A DNA stretch of 64,000 nucleotides from Styela clava. Lineage: Eukaryota. Location of the stretch: assembly GCF_964204865.1 (NCBI RefSeq), contig NC_135254.1:4402001-4466000 (forward strand), read 5' to 3'. Each line of letters starts with the position of its first letter. The stretch's first letter is position 1. The position numbers and the translations under genes were made by a program. The notes under the pieces were generated by a model. The model was not told the origin of the DNA and did no database searches. It was given only the letters and a program-made list of their open reading frames with translations. Positions 25,728 to 56,506 of this stretch are shown here, piece after piece.

Positions 25728-28700
25728 TTATCTCACTGGTATTGAATCATCAAACTTAAATCCTTTTGCCTTCAATGCTTCTATCAGTTTTCTTGTATGG
25801 TCTGAATCTGGATATCCATTGCTGAAAAAAAAGCAATTTAAGAAATCTGTTCGAATAATTTGCGATTCGATTTCGAATATTTGGTTCGCTTGGACAGCCC
25901 CGTTTACAGGAGACAATAGTGCCAAGAATTGGTAAACATTGCGATACAAAACGAACAATTTTTTGCAAACACAATAATCAGTATTTGTCATTTATCAAGC
26001 TAAAGGATGTAAAAACCACCTAAAAACTTACTAAAACCTGCAAAAGTAATTCTTTATCTACATTTGGTGTAAGATTTCAAACTCTTCATAAGGAAACAAT
26101 GTTTCCGCAAATGTGAATGCTTTCCGAACATTGCTAAGATTTTGGAAGAAAAATCTTAACCTTTGAGAATGCTCATCGATAAGATTCTAAAATTCTGTTT
26201 TAAATTATATTCTTTTGTCACAGACATATCGAGCAAGCATGTGGTATTTTCCCTCCCACATCCAGTTAAAAATCTGTTTGAATTCATCAGCCTCCTTTCA
26301 AACTCATGTTCACAAAATAACTTACAAATAATCGCAGATTGATTGATTACCAAATTTGAGGCATAGGACGGTAATTACTAAATTTTTTGACATATTGGCA
26401 GAATTTTTGTAATACTGTTTGGGCTGGTTGCAAAAAACACCCAGCATAAATTATATTGTTAGGCCATAACATTAATATTTAGCTATCAGGCATAGCCAAC
26501 CTTGACTAATAGAATCCGCATTTGACTTTTAGTTTTCTATGATGCAAAAATTGTTAGCATATATTTGCAATCAATAACTTGAGACTGCTAAGCACATCAT
26601 TCCACTTTGCTAGTTGCATCAGCTAACCATAACATTGGTCAATTTAGTGACATTAATGAAGTAACAATTGTCACAAAAAATTTTATGACGAAACAACATC
26701 AAATGCGATTTTTTGATTACTCTCCGAATGCGACAAGGGCCACAGAGAATGAAGCTGCCCTGGGTTTGGACCACCCTGATCTAATATATTTATTAATAGA
26801 TAAGAGTCGTGGTCATAATGGTTGAGTGGTTATGTCTGGGATCTTTAGATCAGACCCTGGTAGATTATAAACATTGTCCAAATCAATTCCATATATTGAT
26901 GTGTTTAGTTTTCTTCTAATCAAAGTTCTCAAAAATTGAAATATTCAAAACAATTTTTAGAAACTTTTTCATGCCCTTTAGGCTTAGAAAATCTCGAAAA
27001 TTAAATACCAATGTCATTATCGACAACTAAATGTACCAGGGCGAATCCCATTTTATGTTTCGTTCCCACAAATTACGACTTGGCAACCAAAATCCGAACT
27101 TTAAATTGTGTTGTAGTTGCAATATGCAGGGATAACAAAATTTTAAAATTAATTTTATTCTTTCGTACCTGCCACCATTTTGTAAAGTGCCATAAATACC
27201 CATCAAGCATAAAACACACAAAGTACTTACATCTCTGATCTCCCAGTTTTATTAGTCTTATGAGGAAACTTATCGTTCCACACAATTTTTCCTCTTCTGT
27301 CACCAACTTCCTGAATCTTGAAAATCAATCCTGCATCGAATGCTTGATAGAGTAAGTTGTAACATATGTCTCCATCATAATCCCATGGCAAATATTCAGT
27401 GAATTCTTGAGCTTCATATGAAACTCCCTGAAATAACAAAACATTAACTAATTATCTTCCATAACTAATTATCTTCCAATTATCTTCCTGGGGATTTGTT
27501 GAAACTGATATAAATATGAGAATATCTATGAAGATTCAGCAAAAGTCAAAAAAATTACCATCAACATACTTGATATTTCCATTTTCAATAAATTACTTCA
27601 ACTTGACAACTCGATAACTCAGATATATATTGAAAACAGGACTTAGGAGGAGGCCTACTTATCAGCTATGTCATGATTTTACTGCACGATAAATGAACTA
27701 AATTCTATGAACATCTGTAATTAAACAAATAACAGTTCAATATTACCCAGGTTTCAACAAGCACGATCTATATATTTAACTGTGTTATGATATTTTTTTT
27801 ACAATGACAAACCATTCAAAGCTTCGATTTCAATTAGAACTGAATTCCATCAGCATATCCAGTTTAAATTAATTATTACTCATTTATTATTAATTATTAC
27901 CCATTAACAAAGCATGAACAAGACTCAATCCATATTAGCATTATACAAAATACTGCCTGATTCTCTATATTTCTGTGAGAAGCAATAACTCATGTGAGCG
28001 AATGCAAGCATTTAGCAATACTGCTTTCAAGCTTTTTGGCTGTGCAATGGCCTAACGGTCAACGTGTTGGACTGAACTATGCTGACATCACATATTGAAC
28101 ATCTCGGTTCAAATCTCCATGGCAACCACCTCACCCAGGGTGAAATGAGGTGGATAGGAAATGTGGAACCAAAAAATCCTAATCGTTTGAAATAATAATA
28201 TCTCTTTAAATGTCATGAGATGTCAATGGCTGCTTGTATAGGACCTTGTTCAGAACAGAAAGCATGAATAAGGACAGCATGAAAAAGTGATAGACAGTAC
28301 TATTACTAGGGATGTCTTTGTTATTTAATCAAAATAGCCATATTTGAAGAATTTATGAAACCAAAAAATATGACTGAAAACAGTTTATTTTCCATCGAAA
28401 GTTTTGTTCACATGTTCTATCAGGTCAATTTTGACATTCTAATGATTTTACTTCTTAATTTCGAAATAAGATATATATTTGTAACCAGTGGCACAGTCAG
28501 GGGTTTTTGGCGTCCCCCCCTTTTGAATTTTTTTGGAAACTGAAAAAATCGCCGATAACGCGTACCAATGCCTTCTGCTGAAATGGCGGATTGTTTTCAT
28601 CGGCGTGGCGTGTTATTTAGGCCGTAAACGCCTTTACATTGGTGTTTATTCTCTCTAAATCACAAATTTGGGCCACGGTAACGATGATAAATATTTTATT

Positions 28701-54600: not shown

Positions 54601-56506
54601 AAAGGCATTTGACTTTTTTCAAAGCAAAAGGGGAGCGCAAAGTTTGTAAGATTTGGGGACGCGGCTCAAAAAGTTTCCAACCATTGGTCTAGTGGTTAAA
54701 GAGCTAGATTTAACTGTAGGATGACATGACAGATTACACATCACAAGTTCAAACCCTGTGTCATGTCAAAGTGTGTAAAAGATTGGGTAGGCAATGCAAT
54801 ACAAGGGAAAATCTGGTCTTTAAAATAAAGTGCCGTTTTACATAACAAAATATATCAGTGGCTGCAAGTATATGGCCTTGTTTGTAAATTAATGTTTTAT
54901 AAAAATATTTAATGTGTCAAATGTCTGAGGGTATGAAGTAAAAAAACACTACTGACATGGGTAACTTCAAATGTGCCTCCTAATGCACTTCAATACAAAA
55001 AGTTTTCAATATTTCCATATTTTTCGATTAATTAGCCACTGTTGCGTATACTCTGGGCCAATTGTTAGCCAAATGAGAGTTTTATGAAAGATATTCCAGA
55101 TTCACATTGTAAAACCGCTGTTTCATAAAAAATGACAGGGAAAGTACGTCATCTTTGTTTTTCAGTATTTATAGTATAATAAACCTTTATGATAAATCTT
55201 TATTTTTAGTACCATTAGCTGGTCTGGAACTGGCAGTGCCATAACCAGATGCCCCTCCAATGACAGAAGATCCTTCCTCATCATCCTTTGAAACTGGTAG
55301 AGCCAAAGGTTGCTCTGCCTTCGGCTTTTCTTCAGCTTTTAAAGATGCTCGTGAAAATATTTCATCGATAAGCAAATCATTGCATTTATCTGATTTTTTC
55401 ACTAAGGGTTCAATTCGAATTGTCTCTTTTAGGAATTCGAGAGATAAATCTCCAAGTTTCAGCAAGCTAAACAGATCTTGGAAGATTTTTCTTCTGTTCT
55501 TGACATCATGTTTCACCCATTTCATCATCCCCCCATATTTGATAGTCTCAGAAGAATACTTTGTTTCTGAAGATTTGAAAAGTCTCAGTATGTCATCCTT
55601 GCTGATATCAAGAAATTCCTTTTTCTTGCTAATTTGTTCAAAATTTGTCTCCAAGAATAGAATAATGGAATCTTTTACTGCCGTTTGTTTAGGAGTTTGA
55701 TTGGTTTCAGAGAGATTCTTCAAGATAAAGCAGTTGTCAATATCAAGGTTTGTCTCAAGTTTTTTGACGTCAGAAAACAATGCAGTGATTACGGATTTCT
55801 CAGCTGTTTTATTGTTCTTAACAATGGGTTCTTTGAGGACAGTTTCCAGAAGAAATTTGAAGGGAAATTGCTCAATCTTAAAGAGTTCAGAAACATCTAT
55901 TTTATCTTTTCCTTTTGCCCATGTTACCACAGCTTTCCATAATGTTTGGTAAGTCTGGTCACTTATGTAAAGCAAGAGATCTGATTTGGTGATGAATGGA
56001 AACATCTCTGAAGAAATAACAGATTCGAAATTATCAATCACGACCTGTACAGCTTGTTGTTTTATATCACGACGGTCATACATTTGGGCCAAGTTGATTA
56101 CAGAGAGACAATTTATTGGAGAAATGTTAATTTCCAAGAATCGAAAACAAAGATTTGTTAATTCCACCATTTGTAAAAGATTGGAAGCATGCAGGATATG
56201 CTGAATGTTTTCTATTTTCAAATCTGCATTTCCTTTATACATGAACTCTATGCATTGTGCGATCCCATTCTGATCGACATCCTTCATATTAATGTGACCG
56301 TCATGAACTTCTTTCAAGTTGCTTGAAAACAAGGATTCAAAGTATTCTGAAGAGGCTGCCAAGACAGTACGATGCACTCGAAATGATTTTTCACCAACGT
56401 TGATGTTAAAATCGCAAAGAAACCCTTTCTCTTTGAACCTGTCATATGATGTCATGAGACGATCTGACTGTTTTACTCTAGCCTGGTGTATCACTTGTGA
56501 ATTCAT
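48611..56506 (-). CDS. BTB-BACK-BACK - coiled coil - Deltex C-terminal (DTC) domain protein, about 654 aa
   Basis: Exons 56506-55213 (donor G|GTACTA, phase 1), 53494-53282, 52042-51876, 50156-49960, 48704-48611; frame-consistent. The last four exons are paralogous to the kinase-DTC gene. The BTB-to-coiled-coil splice is inferred; read-through would stop at 55187. Confidence 0.65.
51140..51315 (-). mobile_element. 5'-truncated SINE copy
   Basis: TTTATCCTGGGAGAGAAAAGCCGATAAG...GCATGGACTTGATGGTGGAGGAGGCTGTAAC. Confidence 0.7.
52490..52745. mobile_element. Helentron-associated (HINE/DINE-1-like) non-autonomous element
   Basis: Sits in an A/T run with no TSD, carries a (GACA)n microsatellite and a terminal hairpin CTTACCGAT-TAAA-ATCGATAAG; absent at homologous intron sites ~30675 and ~54945. 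Confidence 0.6.
52905..53215 (-). mobile_element. SINE copy in an intron of the BTB-DTC gene
   Basis: Same position relative to the coiled-coil exon as 31150-31425. Confidence 0.75.
55187..56506 (-). CDS. BTB/POZ + tandem BACK exon (KLHL-type N-terminus, no Kelch repeats)
   Basis: 439-aa ORF: LCDFNINVGEKSFRVHRTVLAASSEYF (BTB), NCLSVINLAQMY..IDNFESV (BACK 1), NCFILKNL..LETNFEQI..EFLDIS..WVKHD..R (BACK 2). Confidence 0.92.
   Translation of the reverse strand: MNSQVIHQARVKQSDRLMTSYDRFKEKGFLCDFNINVGEKSFRVHRTVLAASSEYFESLFSSNLKEVHDGHINMKDVDQNGIAQCIEFMYKGNADLKIENIQHILHASNLLQMVELTNLCFRFLEINISPINCLSVINLAQMYDRRDIKQQAVQVVIDNFESVISSEMFPFITKSDLLLYISDQTYQTLWKAVVTWAKGKDKIDVSELFKIEQFPFKFLLETVLKEPIVKNNKTAEKSVITALFSDVKKLETNLDIDNCFILKNLSETNQTPKQTAVKDSIILFLETNFEQISKKKEFLDISKDDILRLFKSSETKYSSETIKYGGMMKWVKHDVKNRRKIFQDLFSLLKLGDLSLEFLKETIRIEPLVKKSDKCNDLLIDEIFSRASLKAEEKPKAEQPLALPVSKDDEEGSSVIGGASGYGTASSRPANGTKNKDLS

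What the first reader, a model, noticed from the sequence alone, without database searches (positions are those of the whole stretch)
25728..56506. Paralogous RING-less Deltex-C proteins with swapped heads: IRE1-like kinase-CC-DTC and BTB-BACK-BACK-CC-DTC
Seen: two minus-strand genes share a colinear coiled-coil + 3-exon DTC tail, including introns and an old SINE, but homology ends upstream of the coiled-coil exon. One is headed by a kinase and the other by BTB-BACK, both joined through phase-1 introns, giving 652 and 654 aa with no frameshifts. Known: in Deltex E3 ligases (DTX1-4, DTX3L) the DTC follows a RING and binds ADP-ribose/NAD+ or nucleic-acid ends; no RING exon is present here. Inference: exon shuffling reused DTC as a portable sensor module attached to two outputs, phosphorylation and Cullin-3 ubiquitylation. 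The shared coiled coil could allow heterodimers. This is a candidate lineage-specific signalling or innate-immune system.
Basis: partly seen in the sequence, partly recalled or inferred. Interest (0 to 1): 0.9.

Follow-up and report, generated by a model that had tools for sequence, protein, structure and literature searches.

The report
Hypervariable RING-less Deltex-tail gene array
The two genes are real neighbours in a tandem array of at least 43 sea-squirt (Styela clava) genes that join either a protein kinase or a Cullin-3 adaptor head to a RING-less Deltex C-terminal domain with three fast-evolving surface patches, so it looks like an undescribed intracellular recognition (probably immune) gene family.

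Summary
On the minus strand, gene A (8 exons, 652 aa) is N-terminal region, kinase, helical linker, DTC. Gene B (5 exons, 654 aa) is BTB-BACK, helical linker, DTC. Their tails are colinear, including introns and a tRNA-derived SINE. All head and linker junctions are phase 1, and no RING is encoded anywhere in the window.

The organism is Styela clava. RefSeq already holds automatic "uncharacterized protein" models of both architectures, but I found no paper describing them.

The interpretation needs revision in three ways.
- These are 2 of at least 43 units (14 kinase heads, 29 BTB heads) in a 2.2-Mb array. A second, older array lies on another contig.
- The DTC keeps the DTX3L fold but lacks the catalytic His/Glu pair and most ADP-ribose contacts, so a conserved ADP-ribose/NAD sensor is unlikely.
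- Three short DTC patches show dN/dS of 3.5-5.6. The heads show 0.23-0.29, and patch synonymous change is at or modestly above intron level.

Tails do not group by head type.

Best reading: a germline repertoire of variable DTC recognition modules wired to two outputs, phosphorylation or Cullin-3 ubiquitylation. The function is inferred. No RNA reads could be obtained.

The parts
34565..34796 (-). Gene A exon 1 (start ATG at 34796); N-terminal region with no known domain, predicted disordered
   Evidence: tblastn of RefSeq model P0063 at 97.5%; splice model; pLDDT 20-25 over residues 1-128
33858..34016 (-). Gene A exon 2; phase 1-1 cassette, no Pfam domain
32291..33124 (-). Gene A exon 3: complete Ser/Thr kinase domain, phase 1-1; catalytic Lys, HRDLKPDN, DFG and APE intact; glycine loop atypical
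   Evidence: Pkinase 6.6e-42; best PDB matches are IRE1 at 1e-22; catalytic residues invariant in 18 paralogues; dN/dS 0.23
31871..32014 (-). Gene A linker exon a (48 codons, phase 1-1), charged helix
31629..31870 (-). Gene A-specific 242-bp GT-AG intron that splits the linker exon; shared with kinase copies L040 and L042
31497..31628 (-). Gene A linker exon b (44 codons, phase 1-1); homologous to the 3' half of gene B's linker exon
31146..31420 (-). tRNA-derived SINE copy in gene A's intron, at the position orthologous to the copy in gene B
30135..30301 (-). Gene A DTC exon 1; holds hypervariable patches 1 and 2
27231..27427 (-). Gene A DTC exon 2; holds hypervariable patch 3 and the W..PHKT motif
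   Evidence: DTC 3.4e-7
25728..25821 (-). Gene A DTC exon 3 (NGYPD motif, C-terminal helix, stop codon)
55213..56506 (-). Gene B exon 1: BTB plus a BACK split into two stretches (KLHL-type Cullin-3 adaptor head), ends in phase 1
   Evidence: BTB 9e-26 and BACK 9.3e-22; best PDB matches KLHL3 2.7e-29 and KLHL11; dN/dS 0.29
53282..53494 (-). Gene B linker exon (71 codons, phase 1-1), 61% Glu/Lys/Arg
52904..53206 (-). tRNA-derived SINE copy in gene B's intron, orthologous to the copy in gene A
51876..52042 (-). Gene B DTC exon 1 (hypervariable patches 1 and 2)
49960..50156 (-). Gene B DTC exon 2 (hypervariable patch 3)
   Evidence: DTC 3.3e-6
48611..48704 (-). Gene B DTC exon 3 and stop codon
19470..21775 (+). 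SIKE-family gene (three Pfam-matched exons), convergent with gene A and part of the repeated array unit
40518..43404 (+). SIKE-family gene copy, convergent with gene B; its middle exon is 94% identical to the copy at 20458-20694

Best explanation
What it is. The two genes are neighbouring units of a large, young tandem family in the tunicate Styela clava. Each unit encodes a cytoplasmic modular protein with three parts. First, an effector head: either a catalytically intact Ser/Thr kinase or a KLHL-type BTB-BACK Cullin-3 adaptor. Second, zero to three cassette exons for a long charged helix. Third, a C-terminal DTC domain descended from the DTX3L branch of Deltex.

What changed in the DTC. It has lost the RING partner, the catalytic His/Glu pair and most ADP-ribose contacts. 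It has gained three hypervariable patches under diversifying selection.

How it most likely works. The DTC is the variable target-recognition module, as SPRY is in TRIM5/finTRIM and Kelch is in KLHL proteins. A bound target is then ubiquitylated through Cullin-3 (BTB type), or it clusters and activates the kinase or is phosphorylated by it (kinase type). Because all junctions are phase 1, and tail exons and introns are shared, heads and tails are reshuffled within the array. One recognition repertoire is therefore read out through two outputs. The likeliest setting is intracellular innate immunity or another genetic conflict.

Shown: gene structure, domains, array, residue losses, selection pattern. 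Inferred: target binding, Cullin-3 use, kinase activation, immune role.
For: Structure and domains.

Array:
- At least 59 DTC exon matches genome-wide, most on contig C5 between 2.6 and 4.8 Mb.
- 14 kinase heads at 94-100% identity and 29 BTB heads at 79-100% lie there; 38 have a detected DTC exon within 14 kb downstream.
- A second array on C6 holds both head types at 52-62% identity.

DTC fold and origin:
- Best PDB sequence match is the DTX3L DTC, 9e-19.
- The AF2 model has DTC pLDDT 95-98, and Foldseek gives 3PG6 with TM 0.84 and rmsd 2.0 A.
- The nearest RING-bearing relative is S. clava's own RRM_PARP14-RING-DTC protein P0082.

Selection among array copies:
- dN/dS is 3.5, 5.6 and 5.5 in the three patches. 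Fisher p on disjoint pairs is 7e-5 to 2e-7.
- dN/dS is 0.5-0.9 in the rest of the DTC, 0.29 in BTB-BACK and 0.23 in the kinase.
- Patch synonymous difference is 0.07-0.13, against 0.04-0.10 in the neighbouring intron, so mutation there is not markedly raised.

Other points:
- Kinase catalytic residues are invariant in 18 paralogues.
- The BTB head aligns best to KLHL3 and KLHL11 from Cullin-3 complexes, with Leu-Lys-Glu aligned to KLHL3's Met-Ser-Glu.
- Tails group by array, not by head. Head type needs 11-12 changes on the tail tree. A kinase-linked tail intron is 4.7% from a BTB-linked one. One kinase model and one BTB model share a tail identical from ESQSSSQ to the C-terminus, 148 of 157 aligned residues overall.
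- By the alignment the patches map to human DTX3L 612-622, 628-634 and 666-678. A 2026 preprint reports a cluster of positively selected codons in mammalian DTX3L at 616-697 (10.64898/2026.04.23.720386).
Against: - No expression or splicing data could be obtained for this locus. Support for splicing is indirect: RefSeq automatic models, and one 2,175-bp intron-free contig from another organism that encodes BTB-BACK-DTC.
- No ligand, partner or pathogen is known.
- The three patches could not be placed on three-dimensional coordinates, so it is not shown that they form one surface.
- The dN/dS estimates are pairwise counts on paralogues that recombine. No recombination-aware site model was run.
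- Trp578, the second His of the HKT motif and the GYPDP motif are kept, so some nucleotide-type ligand is not excluded.
- The kinase glycine loop is atypical (only the third Gly is kept), so catalytic activity is not certain.
Confidence: 0.55

Rival explanations
1. The DTC is kept as a conserved sensor of ADP-ribose, NAD+ or nucleic-acid ends. It simply couples that signal to phosphorylation or to Cullin-3 ubiquitylation.
For: The DTC fold is retained with high confidence. Trp578, which stacks on the adenine in DTX2, is nearly invariant, as are the HKT and GYPDP motifs. The domain derives from the DTX3L branch, which binds ADP-ribose and nucleic acids (PMC7442474, PMC11460948).
Against: The His582 equivalent is Pro, the Glu608 equivalent is Ala, the His594 equivalent is Asn, the Arg535 equivalent is Phe, the EHPNPG loop is deleted and the Ser567/568 loop is shorter. 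A triple mutant that includes His582 and His594 abolishes ADP-ribose binding in DTX2 (PMC7442474). A conserved small-ligand sensor does not predict three patches with dN/dS of 3.5-5.6.
Confidence: 0.15
2. The variable DTC surface contacts a co-evolving host partner rather than a pathogen. Candidates are PARP9/PARP14-like macrodomain proteins or the SIKE-family proteins encoded in the same array units. The family would then be a regulatory or decoy layer on an endogenous pathway.
For: In mammals the rapidly evolving DTC region overlaps the DTX3L-PARP9 macrodomain interface (preprint). Every SIKE-family exon in the genome lies inside this array, one gene per unit on the opposite strand.
Against: No partner family with matching copy number or variability was looked for or found. 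The older C6 array has no SIKE genes. Co-amplification can follow merely from lying inside the duplicated unit.
Confidence: 0.15
3. The heads and tails form a cluster-type transcription unit. Alternative head exons (kinase or BTB) are spliced to tails of the same or downstream units. The one-head-one-tail models for A and B would then be only part of the picture.
For: All head, linker and first DTC junctions are phase 1, so any head can join any tail in frame. RefSeq models P0039 (BTB) and P0071 (kinase) share a tail identical from ESQSSSQ to the C-terminus. One gene identifier carries BTB isoforms in one release and a kinase model in another.
Against: In the window each head has its own complete tail 1.7-3 kb downstream. 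A SIKE-family gene on the opposite strand and about 13 kb separate the units. Identical tails can also come from very recent duplication or gene conversion.
Confidence: 0.1
4. The array is a recent, selectively neutral segmental amplification. Most copies would be functionless, and the variability would reflect relaxed constraint or local hypermutation.
For: The copies are young: intron divergence is 4-10%. A few copies carry stops or lack parts.
Against: Relaxed constraint cannot raise dN/dS above 1, yet the patches reach 3.5-5.6 with synonymous change at or modestly above intron level. The heads are under purifying selection at 0.23-0.29. Head reading frames are open in nearly all copies.
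Confidence: 0.05

Closest known systems
DTX3L (Deltex E3 ligase; DTC structure PDB 3PG6) and S. clava's own RRM_PARP14-RING-DTC protein (P0082)
   Same: Homologous DTC domain: 39-40% identity to the human DTX3L DTC, TM 0.84, and 45% identity to P0082. The same part of the domain evolves fast in mammalian DTX3L.
   Different: There is no RING, no KH or RRM domains, and no catalytic His/Glu pair. Most ADP-ribose contacts are replaced and the EHPNPG loop is deleted. The genes stand in arrays of tens of copies, with kinase or BTB-BACK heads.
KLHL/KBTBD BTB-BACK-Kelch Cullin-3 substrate adaptors (KLHL3, KLHL11)
   Same: BTB plus BACK head, with best PDB matches to KLHL3 and KLHL11 from Cullin-3 complexes, and an aligned hydrophobic-x-Glu motif. 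The logic is the same: an adaptor head followed by a C-terminal substrate-binding domain.
   Different: The Kelch propeller is replaced by a DTC. The BACK is interrupted by about 120 residues, giving two Pfam stretches. An optional charged helix follows the head.
finTRIM / TRIM5-type multigene restriction-factor families
   Same: Tandem lineage-specific expansion. A conserved effector part sits beside a C-terminal recognition domain with a few hypervariable, positively selected patches (my knowledge of those families; here).
   Different: The domains are unrelated (DTC instead of SPRY/B30.2; kinase or BTB instead of RING-B-box). There are two alternative effector heads on one tail repertoire. 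No antiviral activity has been shown.
IRE1 / RNase L kinases
   Same: The kinase domain's best solved relatives are IRE1 (1e-22), and it has the GT.GW.APE activation-segment motif (the motif is from my knowledge). In both, a sensor domain joined to a kinase suggests activation by clustering.
   Different: There is no KEN ribonuclease domain and no luminal or ankyrin sensor. The margin over unrelated kinases is small. RefSeq names the paralogues after many different kinases.

Membership tests
Deltex (DTX) E3 ubiquitin ligases | DTC domain fold | tested here: met
   Pfam DTC at 65-72 bits on full-length paralogue models. DTX3L DTC 9e-19 by sequence. AF2 pLDDT 95-98, and Foldseek hit 3PG6 with TM 0.84.
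Deltex (DTX) E3 ubiquitin ligases | RING domain directly N-terminal to the DTC | tested here: not met
   No RING family in Pfam scans of P0061 and P0063. No RING signature in six frames of the window or in either model.
Deltex (DTX) E3 ubiquitin ligases | Catalytic His582-Glu608 pair (DTX2 numbering), described as strictly conserved in DTX proteins (PMC7615817) | tested here: not met
   The His582 position is Pro (or Ser/Leu) and the Glu608 position is Ala (or Val/Ser/Thr) in all RING-less copies examined.
Deltex (DTX) E3 ubiquitin ligases | ADP-ribose contact residues Arg535, Ser567/568 loop, Trp578, His594 (PMC7442474) | tested here: not met
   Only Trp578 is kept. Arg535 is Phe, His594 is Asn, and the Ser loop is two residues shorter. 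Actual binding was not testable.
BTB-BACK Cullin-3 substrate adaptors (KLHL type) | BTB domain followed by BACK | tested here: met
   BTB 9e-26 and BACK 9.3e-22; KLHL3 2.7e-29 and KLHL11 2.9e-26.
BTB-BACK Cullin-3 substrate adaptors (KLHL type) | Hydrophobic-x-Glu Cullin-3 contact motif in the BTB | tested here: inconclusive
   Leu-Lys-Glu aligns with KLHL3 Met-Ser-Glu. The role of this motif is recalled from the literature, and binding was not tested.
BTB-BACK Cullin-3 substrate adaptors (KLHL type) | C-terminal Kelch propeller | tested here: not met
   No Kelch family in Pfam; a DTC takes its place.
IRE1 / RNase L kinase family | Kinase domain closest to IRE1 | tested here: inconclusive
   The top 13 PDB matches are IRE1 at about 1e-22, but a CDPK scores 2.6e-21.
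IRE1 / RNase L kinase family | KEN ribonuclease domain after the kinase | tested here: not met
   The kinase is followed by a helix and a DTC. No other Pfam family is found.
Active eukaryotic protein kinases | Catalytic Lys, alpha-C Glu, HRD..N, DFG, APE | tested here: met
   All are present in the exon and invariant across 18 paralogues. The glycine loop keeps only its third Gly.
Diversifying multigene recognition families (immune type) | Tandem expansion with positively selected patches in the recognition domain and conserved effector parts | tested here: met
Diversifying multigene recognition families (immune type) | Induction by infection or binding to a pathogen component | not testable with these tools
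Dimeric coiled coil | Heptad hydrophobic core and pairing | tested here: inconclusive
   The linkers are 51-61% Glu/Lys/Arg, with mean a/d hydrophobic occupancy of 0.43-0.55. AF2 predicts one 85-residue helix. The complex test gave weak support only.

The most novel reading that the evidence does not exclude
A germline-encoded, hypervariable intracellular recognition repertoire built on the DTC fold. Tens of recombining tails are wired to two alternative effector heads: a kinase for signalling and a Cullin-3 adaptor for destruction. Heads and tails are reassorted by recombination or splicing. This would be a new class of animal innate immune receptor or restriction factor in a chordate that lacks adaptive immunity.
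Probability: 0.35. Interest if true: 0.85.

Novelty: new variant of a known kind. Interest (0 to 1): 0.66.

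Why it matters
The DTC domain is known only as the catalytic and ADP-ribose-binding partner of a RING in Deltex ligases. Here it has been freed from the RING, has lost the catalytic residues, and is used at least 70 times (two arrays) as a fast-evolving module on two different effector heads.

If the reading is right, three things follow.
- It shows a new way for a chordate lacking adaptive immunity to build an intracellular recognition repertoire.
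- It offers a natural experiment on what the fast-evolving face of the DTX3L DTC recognises in vertebrates.
- It gives a clear case of phase-compatible exon shuffling still at work inside a tandem array.

Each step can be tested with ordinary biochemistry and RNA-seq.

Tried and rejected
Tools that were not available or gave nothing:
The junctions therefore remain unconfirmed by reads.
The source of the Logan contig P0086 and the genomic place of P0063 could not be looked up.
Exon DNA was available for only 19 (DTC exon 1) and 27 (DTC exon 2) copies, and the C6 array layout could not be read.

Full report
**1. What is in the window**

The window is contig C5, 4,402,001-4,466,000, of a 377-Mb assembly. 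Every close protein match is a RefSeq protein of the ascidian Styela clava.

- a complete protein kinase (6.6e-42) at 32283-33098, minus strand;
- BTB (9e-26) and BACK in two stretches (9.3e-22) at 55187-56506, minus strand;
- DTC on the middle tail exon of both genes.

Using GT/AG sites and RefSeq paralogues as guides, I rebuilt both genes in a script.
- Gene A has 8 exons: 34796-34565, 34016-33858, 33124-32291, 32014-31871, 31628-31497, 30301-30135, 27427-27231 and 25821-25728. It encodes 652 aa.
- Gene B has 5 exons: 56506-55213, 53494-53282, 52042-51876, 50156-49960 and 48704-48611. It encodes 654 aa.

Every intron from gene A's exon 1 to the first DTC exon is phase 1, as are gene B's head-to-linker and linker-to-DTC introns. 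Gene A's exon 2, kinase exon and both linker exons, and gene B's linker exon, are therefore symmetric 1-1 cassettes.

Model A matches RefSeq model P0063 (LOC120332839) over its whole length; identity is 98.6% of P0063's 661 aa, with the difference lying mainly at the C-terminal end. No RING signature exists in any frame of the window.

The joined models were used only inside scripts. All searches were made exon by exon or with database proteins.

**2. The shared tail**

The two loci are colinear from 25009-31604 to 47897-53389 at 71-83% identity, introns included. A tRNA-derived SINE lies at the same intron position in both genes and shares deletions against other copies. By eye, homology continues across an A-specific 242-bp intron to the acceptor of the linker exon and then stops. 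Two other kinase-type copies share that extra intron, and the RefSeq model splices it out.

The duplicated unit also extends downstream of the tails: 19551-25832 matches 40518-48715. There it contains a three-exon SIKE-family gene on the plus strand.

**3. Not a pair but an array**

Searching the whole genome gave the following.
- At least 59 DTC exon matches, most of them on C5 between 2.6 and 4.8 Mb.
- 14 kinase heads there, at 94-100% identity to gene A's.
- 29 BTB-BACK heads there, at 79-100% identity to gene B's.
- 38 of these 43 heads have a detected DTC exon within 14 kb downstream. The head order along the contig is mixed, and median spacing is 34 kb.

A second array on C6 (about 21.7-22.5 Mb) holds both head types at 52-62% identity. 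Smaller groups lie on C19, C1, C8 and C9. RefSeq models exist for both architectures in both arrays. A few models have a roughly 520-aa head with no Pfam family.

**4. Distribution and prior description**

An exhaustive HMMER search with a DTC tail covered 1.84 billion representatives. Kinase-DTC and BTB-DTC proteins were found only in S. clava, with one exception: P0086. P0086 is a 546-aa BTB-BACK-DTC protein on a 2,175-bp contig from a public sequencing run. It is only about 41% identical to any S. clava locus, so it comes from another organism. The contig has no introns, so it is probably a transcript. The next-best matches are vertebrate DTX3L proteins with RINGs.

Other RING-less DTC models do occur elsewhere, such as Macro-DTC and RRM_PARP14-DTC.

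Full-text searches found no paper on these architectures. They are annotated automatically but, within that library, undescribed.

**5. What kind of DTC this is**

The closest solved relative is the DTX3L DTC (3PG6): 9e-19 by sequence. An AF2 model of the tail, built from 130 sequences, has pLDDT 95-98. It superposes on 3PG6 with TM 0.84 and rmsd 2.0 A. The nearest RING-bearing relative is S. clava's own RRM_PARP14-RING-DTC protein, P0082.

In DTX2, ADP-ribose is held by Arg535, the Ser567/568 main chain, Trp578, His582 and His594 (PMC7442474). His582 and Glu608 form the catalytic pair and are strictly conserved in DTX proteins (PMC7615817).

| DTX2 position | State in the RING-less S. clava tails |
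|---|---|
| Arg535 | Phe |
| EHPNPG loop | deleted |
| Ser567/568 loop | two residues shorter |
| Trp578 | kept |
| His582 | Pro |
| His594 | Asn |
| Glu608 | Ala |

P0082 also carries Pro-His-Lys-Thr in place of His-His-Lys-Thr, so the loss of His582 probably came before the loss of the RING.

**6. Selection**

I made codon alignments of exon DNA from array copies and counted changes by the Nei-Gojobori method.

| Region | dN/dS |
|---|---|
| DTC exon 1, all codons (19 copies) | 2.2 |
| DTC exon 2, all codons (27 copies) | 1.1 |
| BTB-BACK head | 0.29 |
| Kinase head | 0.23 |
| Patch 1: 12 codons after the IINQQP motif | 3.5 |
| Patch 2: 6 codons around EG..T | 5.6 |
| Patch 3: 14 codons after YLP | 5.5 |
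| Rest of the DTC | 0.5-0.9 |

The excess lies entirely in the three patches. Fisher tests on disjoint pairs give p from 7e-5 to 2e-7 for the patches.

Synonymous difference in the patches is 0.07-0.13. The intron between DTC exons 1 and 2 differs by 0.04-0.10 among most copies. Patch synonymous change is thus at or modestly above intron level, so the pattern reflects selection rather than local hypermutation.

In the AF2 model, patch 1 is the first strand of a hairpin. Patch 2 is the loop and start of the return strand. Patch 3 is a loop plus one face of the first helix.

By the alignment the patches correspond to human DTX3L 612-622, 628-634 and 666-678. A 2026 preprint reports a cluster of positively selected codons in mammalian DTX3L at 616-697, beside strictly conserved H707, Y719 and E733.

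**7. Heads and tails have different histories**

- On a tree of 55 tails, the C5 and C6 arrays form two clades that each contain both head types. Head type needs 11-12 changes, close to the shuffled expectation, although only one branch is strongly supported.
- At the DNA level, a kinase-linked tail intron (L032) is 4.7% from a BTB-linked one (L038). Gene A's tail is the outlier, at 16-19% from all others.
- One kinase model (P0071) and one BTB model (P0039) share a tail identical from ESQSSSQ to the C-terminus (148 of 157 aligned residues in all).

So tails are exchanged between head types. The route could be unequal crossing-over or gene conversion in the shared tail, or possibly alternative splicing. 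Uniform phase 1 would allow the latter.

**8. The other parts**

- Kinase: it has all catalytic motifs, and they are invariant in 18 paralogues. Only the third glycine of the glycine loop is kept. IRE1 is the best PDB match by a small margin, and no KEN domain follows.
- BTB-BACK head: it aligns best to KLHL3 and KLHL11, both solved with Cullin-3. Leu-Lys-Glu sits where KLHL3 has Met-Ser-Glu.
- Linker: it is 51-61% Glu/Lys/Arg with a weak heptad pattern. It is predicted as a single 85-residue helix. Its copy number varies from none to three exons among copies, and many BTB copies lack it.
- Linker pairing: a complex test of gene A-type against gene B-type linker gave weak support. The score was 0.49 and the best of 3 controls 0.02. 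That mark was reached by 51 of 78 solved complexes and 2 of 108 mismatched pairs. At 0.60 or under, however, it was reached by only 5 of those 78 solved complexes and by all 4 mismatches that passed. The runs agree in at least 92% of contacts, and the partner's pLDDT is at least 82. This neither establishes pairing nor separates hetero- from homodimers.
- Gene A's first 128 residues are predicted disordered.

**9. Reading**

Shown:
- gene structures, domains, array size and RING absence;
- loss of catalytic and most ligand residues;
- patch-limited positive selection with conserved heads;
- mixing of tails among heads.

Inferred:
- The DTC is a variable target-binding module.
- BTB-type proteins pass the target to Cullin-3.
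- Kinase-type proteins are activated by clustering on the target, or phosphorylate it.
- The setting is intracellular immunity or another conflict.

I give this 0.55. The rivals are:

| Rival | Confidence |
|---|---|
| Host-partner interface, including the co-amplified SIKE-like genes | 0.15 |
| Cluster-type alternative splicing of heads (not exclusive with the main reading) | 0.10 |
| Neutral amplification | 0.05 |

**10. Limits**

- No reads could be laid on the locus.
- The selection test is pairwise, on recombining paralogues.
- The patches were not mapped on coordinates.

Noticed in passing
window 19470-21775 (+) and 40518-43404 (+): Each array unit also carries a three-exon SIKE-family (PF05769) gene, convergent with the DTC gene. 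All 95 SIKE exon matches in the genome lie inside the C5 array (2.67-4.72 Mb), always on the strand opposite the DTC genes. So the species' whole SIKE family seems to be co-amplified here.
   Followed up: partly
proteins P0039 and P0071 (C6 array, outside the window): A BTB-type and a kinase-type RefSeq model share a DTC tail identical from ESQSSSQ to the C-terminus (148 of 157 aligned residues overall). LOC120331541 carries BTB isoforms in one annotation release and a kinase model in another. Alternative heads may be spliced to one tail.
   Followed up: partly
proteins P0077 and P0088 (C6 array, outside the window): A third head type of about 520 aa, with no Pfam or PDB sequence match, sits in front of the same DTC tail. 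The protein atlas gives only a weak ZU5/UPA/FIIND-like lead (score 0.82), below the level that can be trusted.
   Followed up: partly
window 1631-1826, 11575-11743, 31146-31420, 35772-36137, 51119-51320, 52904-53206, 62280-62613: Copies of one tRNA-derived SINE family with box A- and box B-like head sequences. ARAGORN calls none of them as a tRNA.
   Followed up: partly
loci L031-L050 (C5 array); L036:3807-4022 and 8289-8504: The charged-helix exon varies from 0 to 3 copies among units. Many BTB units lack it, and one stretch holds two such exons with no head nearby.
   Followed up: partly
window 25728-31604 (gene A tail): Gene A's tail is the most divergent of the 11 sampled on C5. Its intron differs by 16-19% from all the others, which differ by 4-10% among themselves.
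   Followed up: partly
protein P0082 and representatives P0097, P0116, P0207: RING-bearing DTX3L-like proteins also carry Pro-His-Lys-Thr instead of His-His-Lys-Thr, including S. clava's own. Loss of the catalytic His is therefore not confined to RING-less proteins.
   Followed up: partly
contig C10 4.06-4.38 Mb and 5.9-6.3 Mb (outside the window): Another array holds about 35 single-exon kinase paralogues, 32-34% identical to gene A's kinase. Their tails were not examined.
   Followed up: no
window 15141-15815 (-): An open reading frame with a TMEM9 domain (2.2e-32), unrelated to the array.
   Followed up: no
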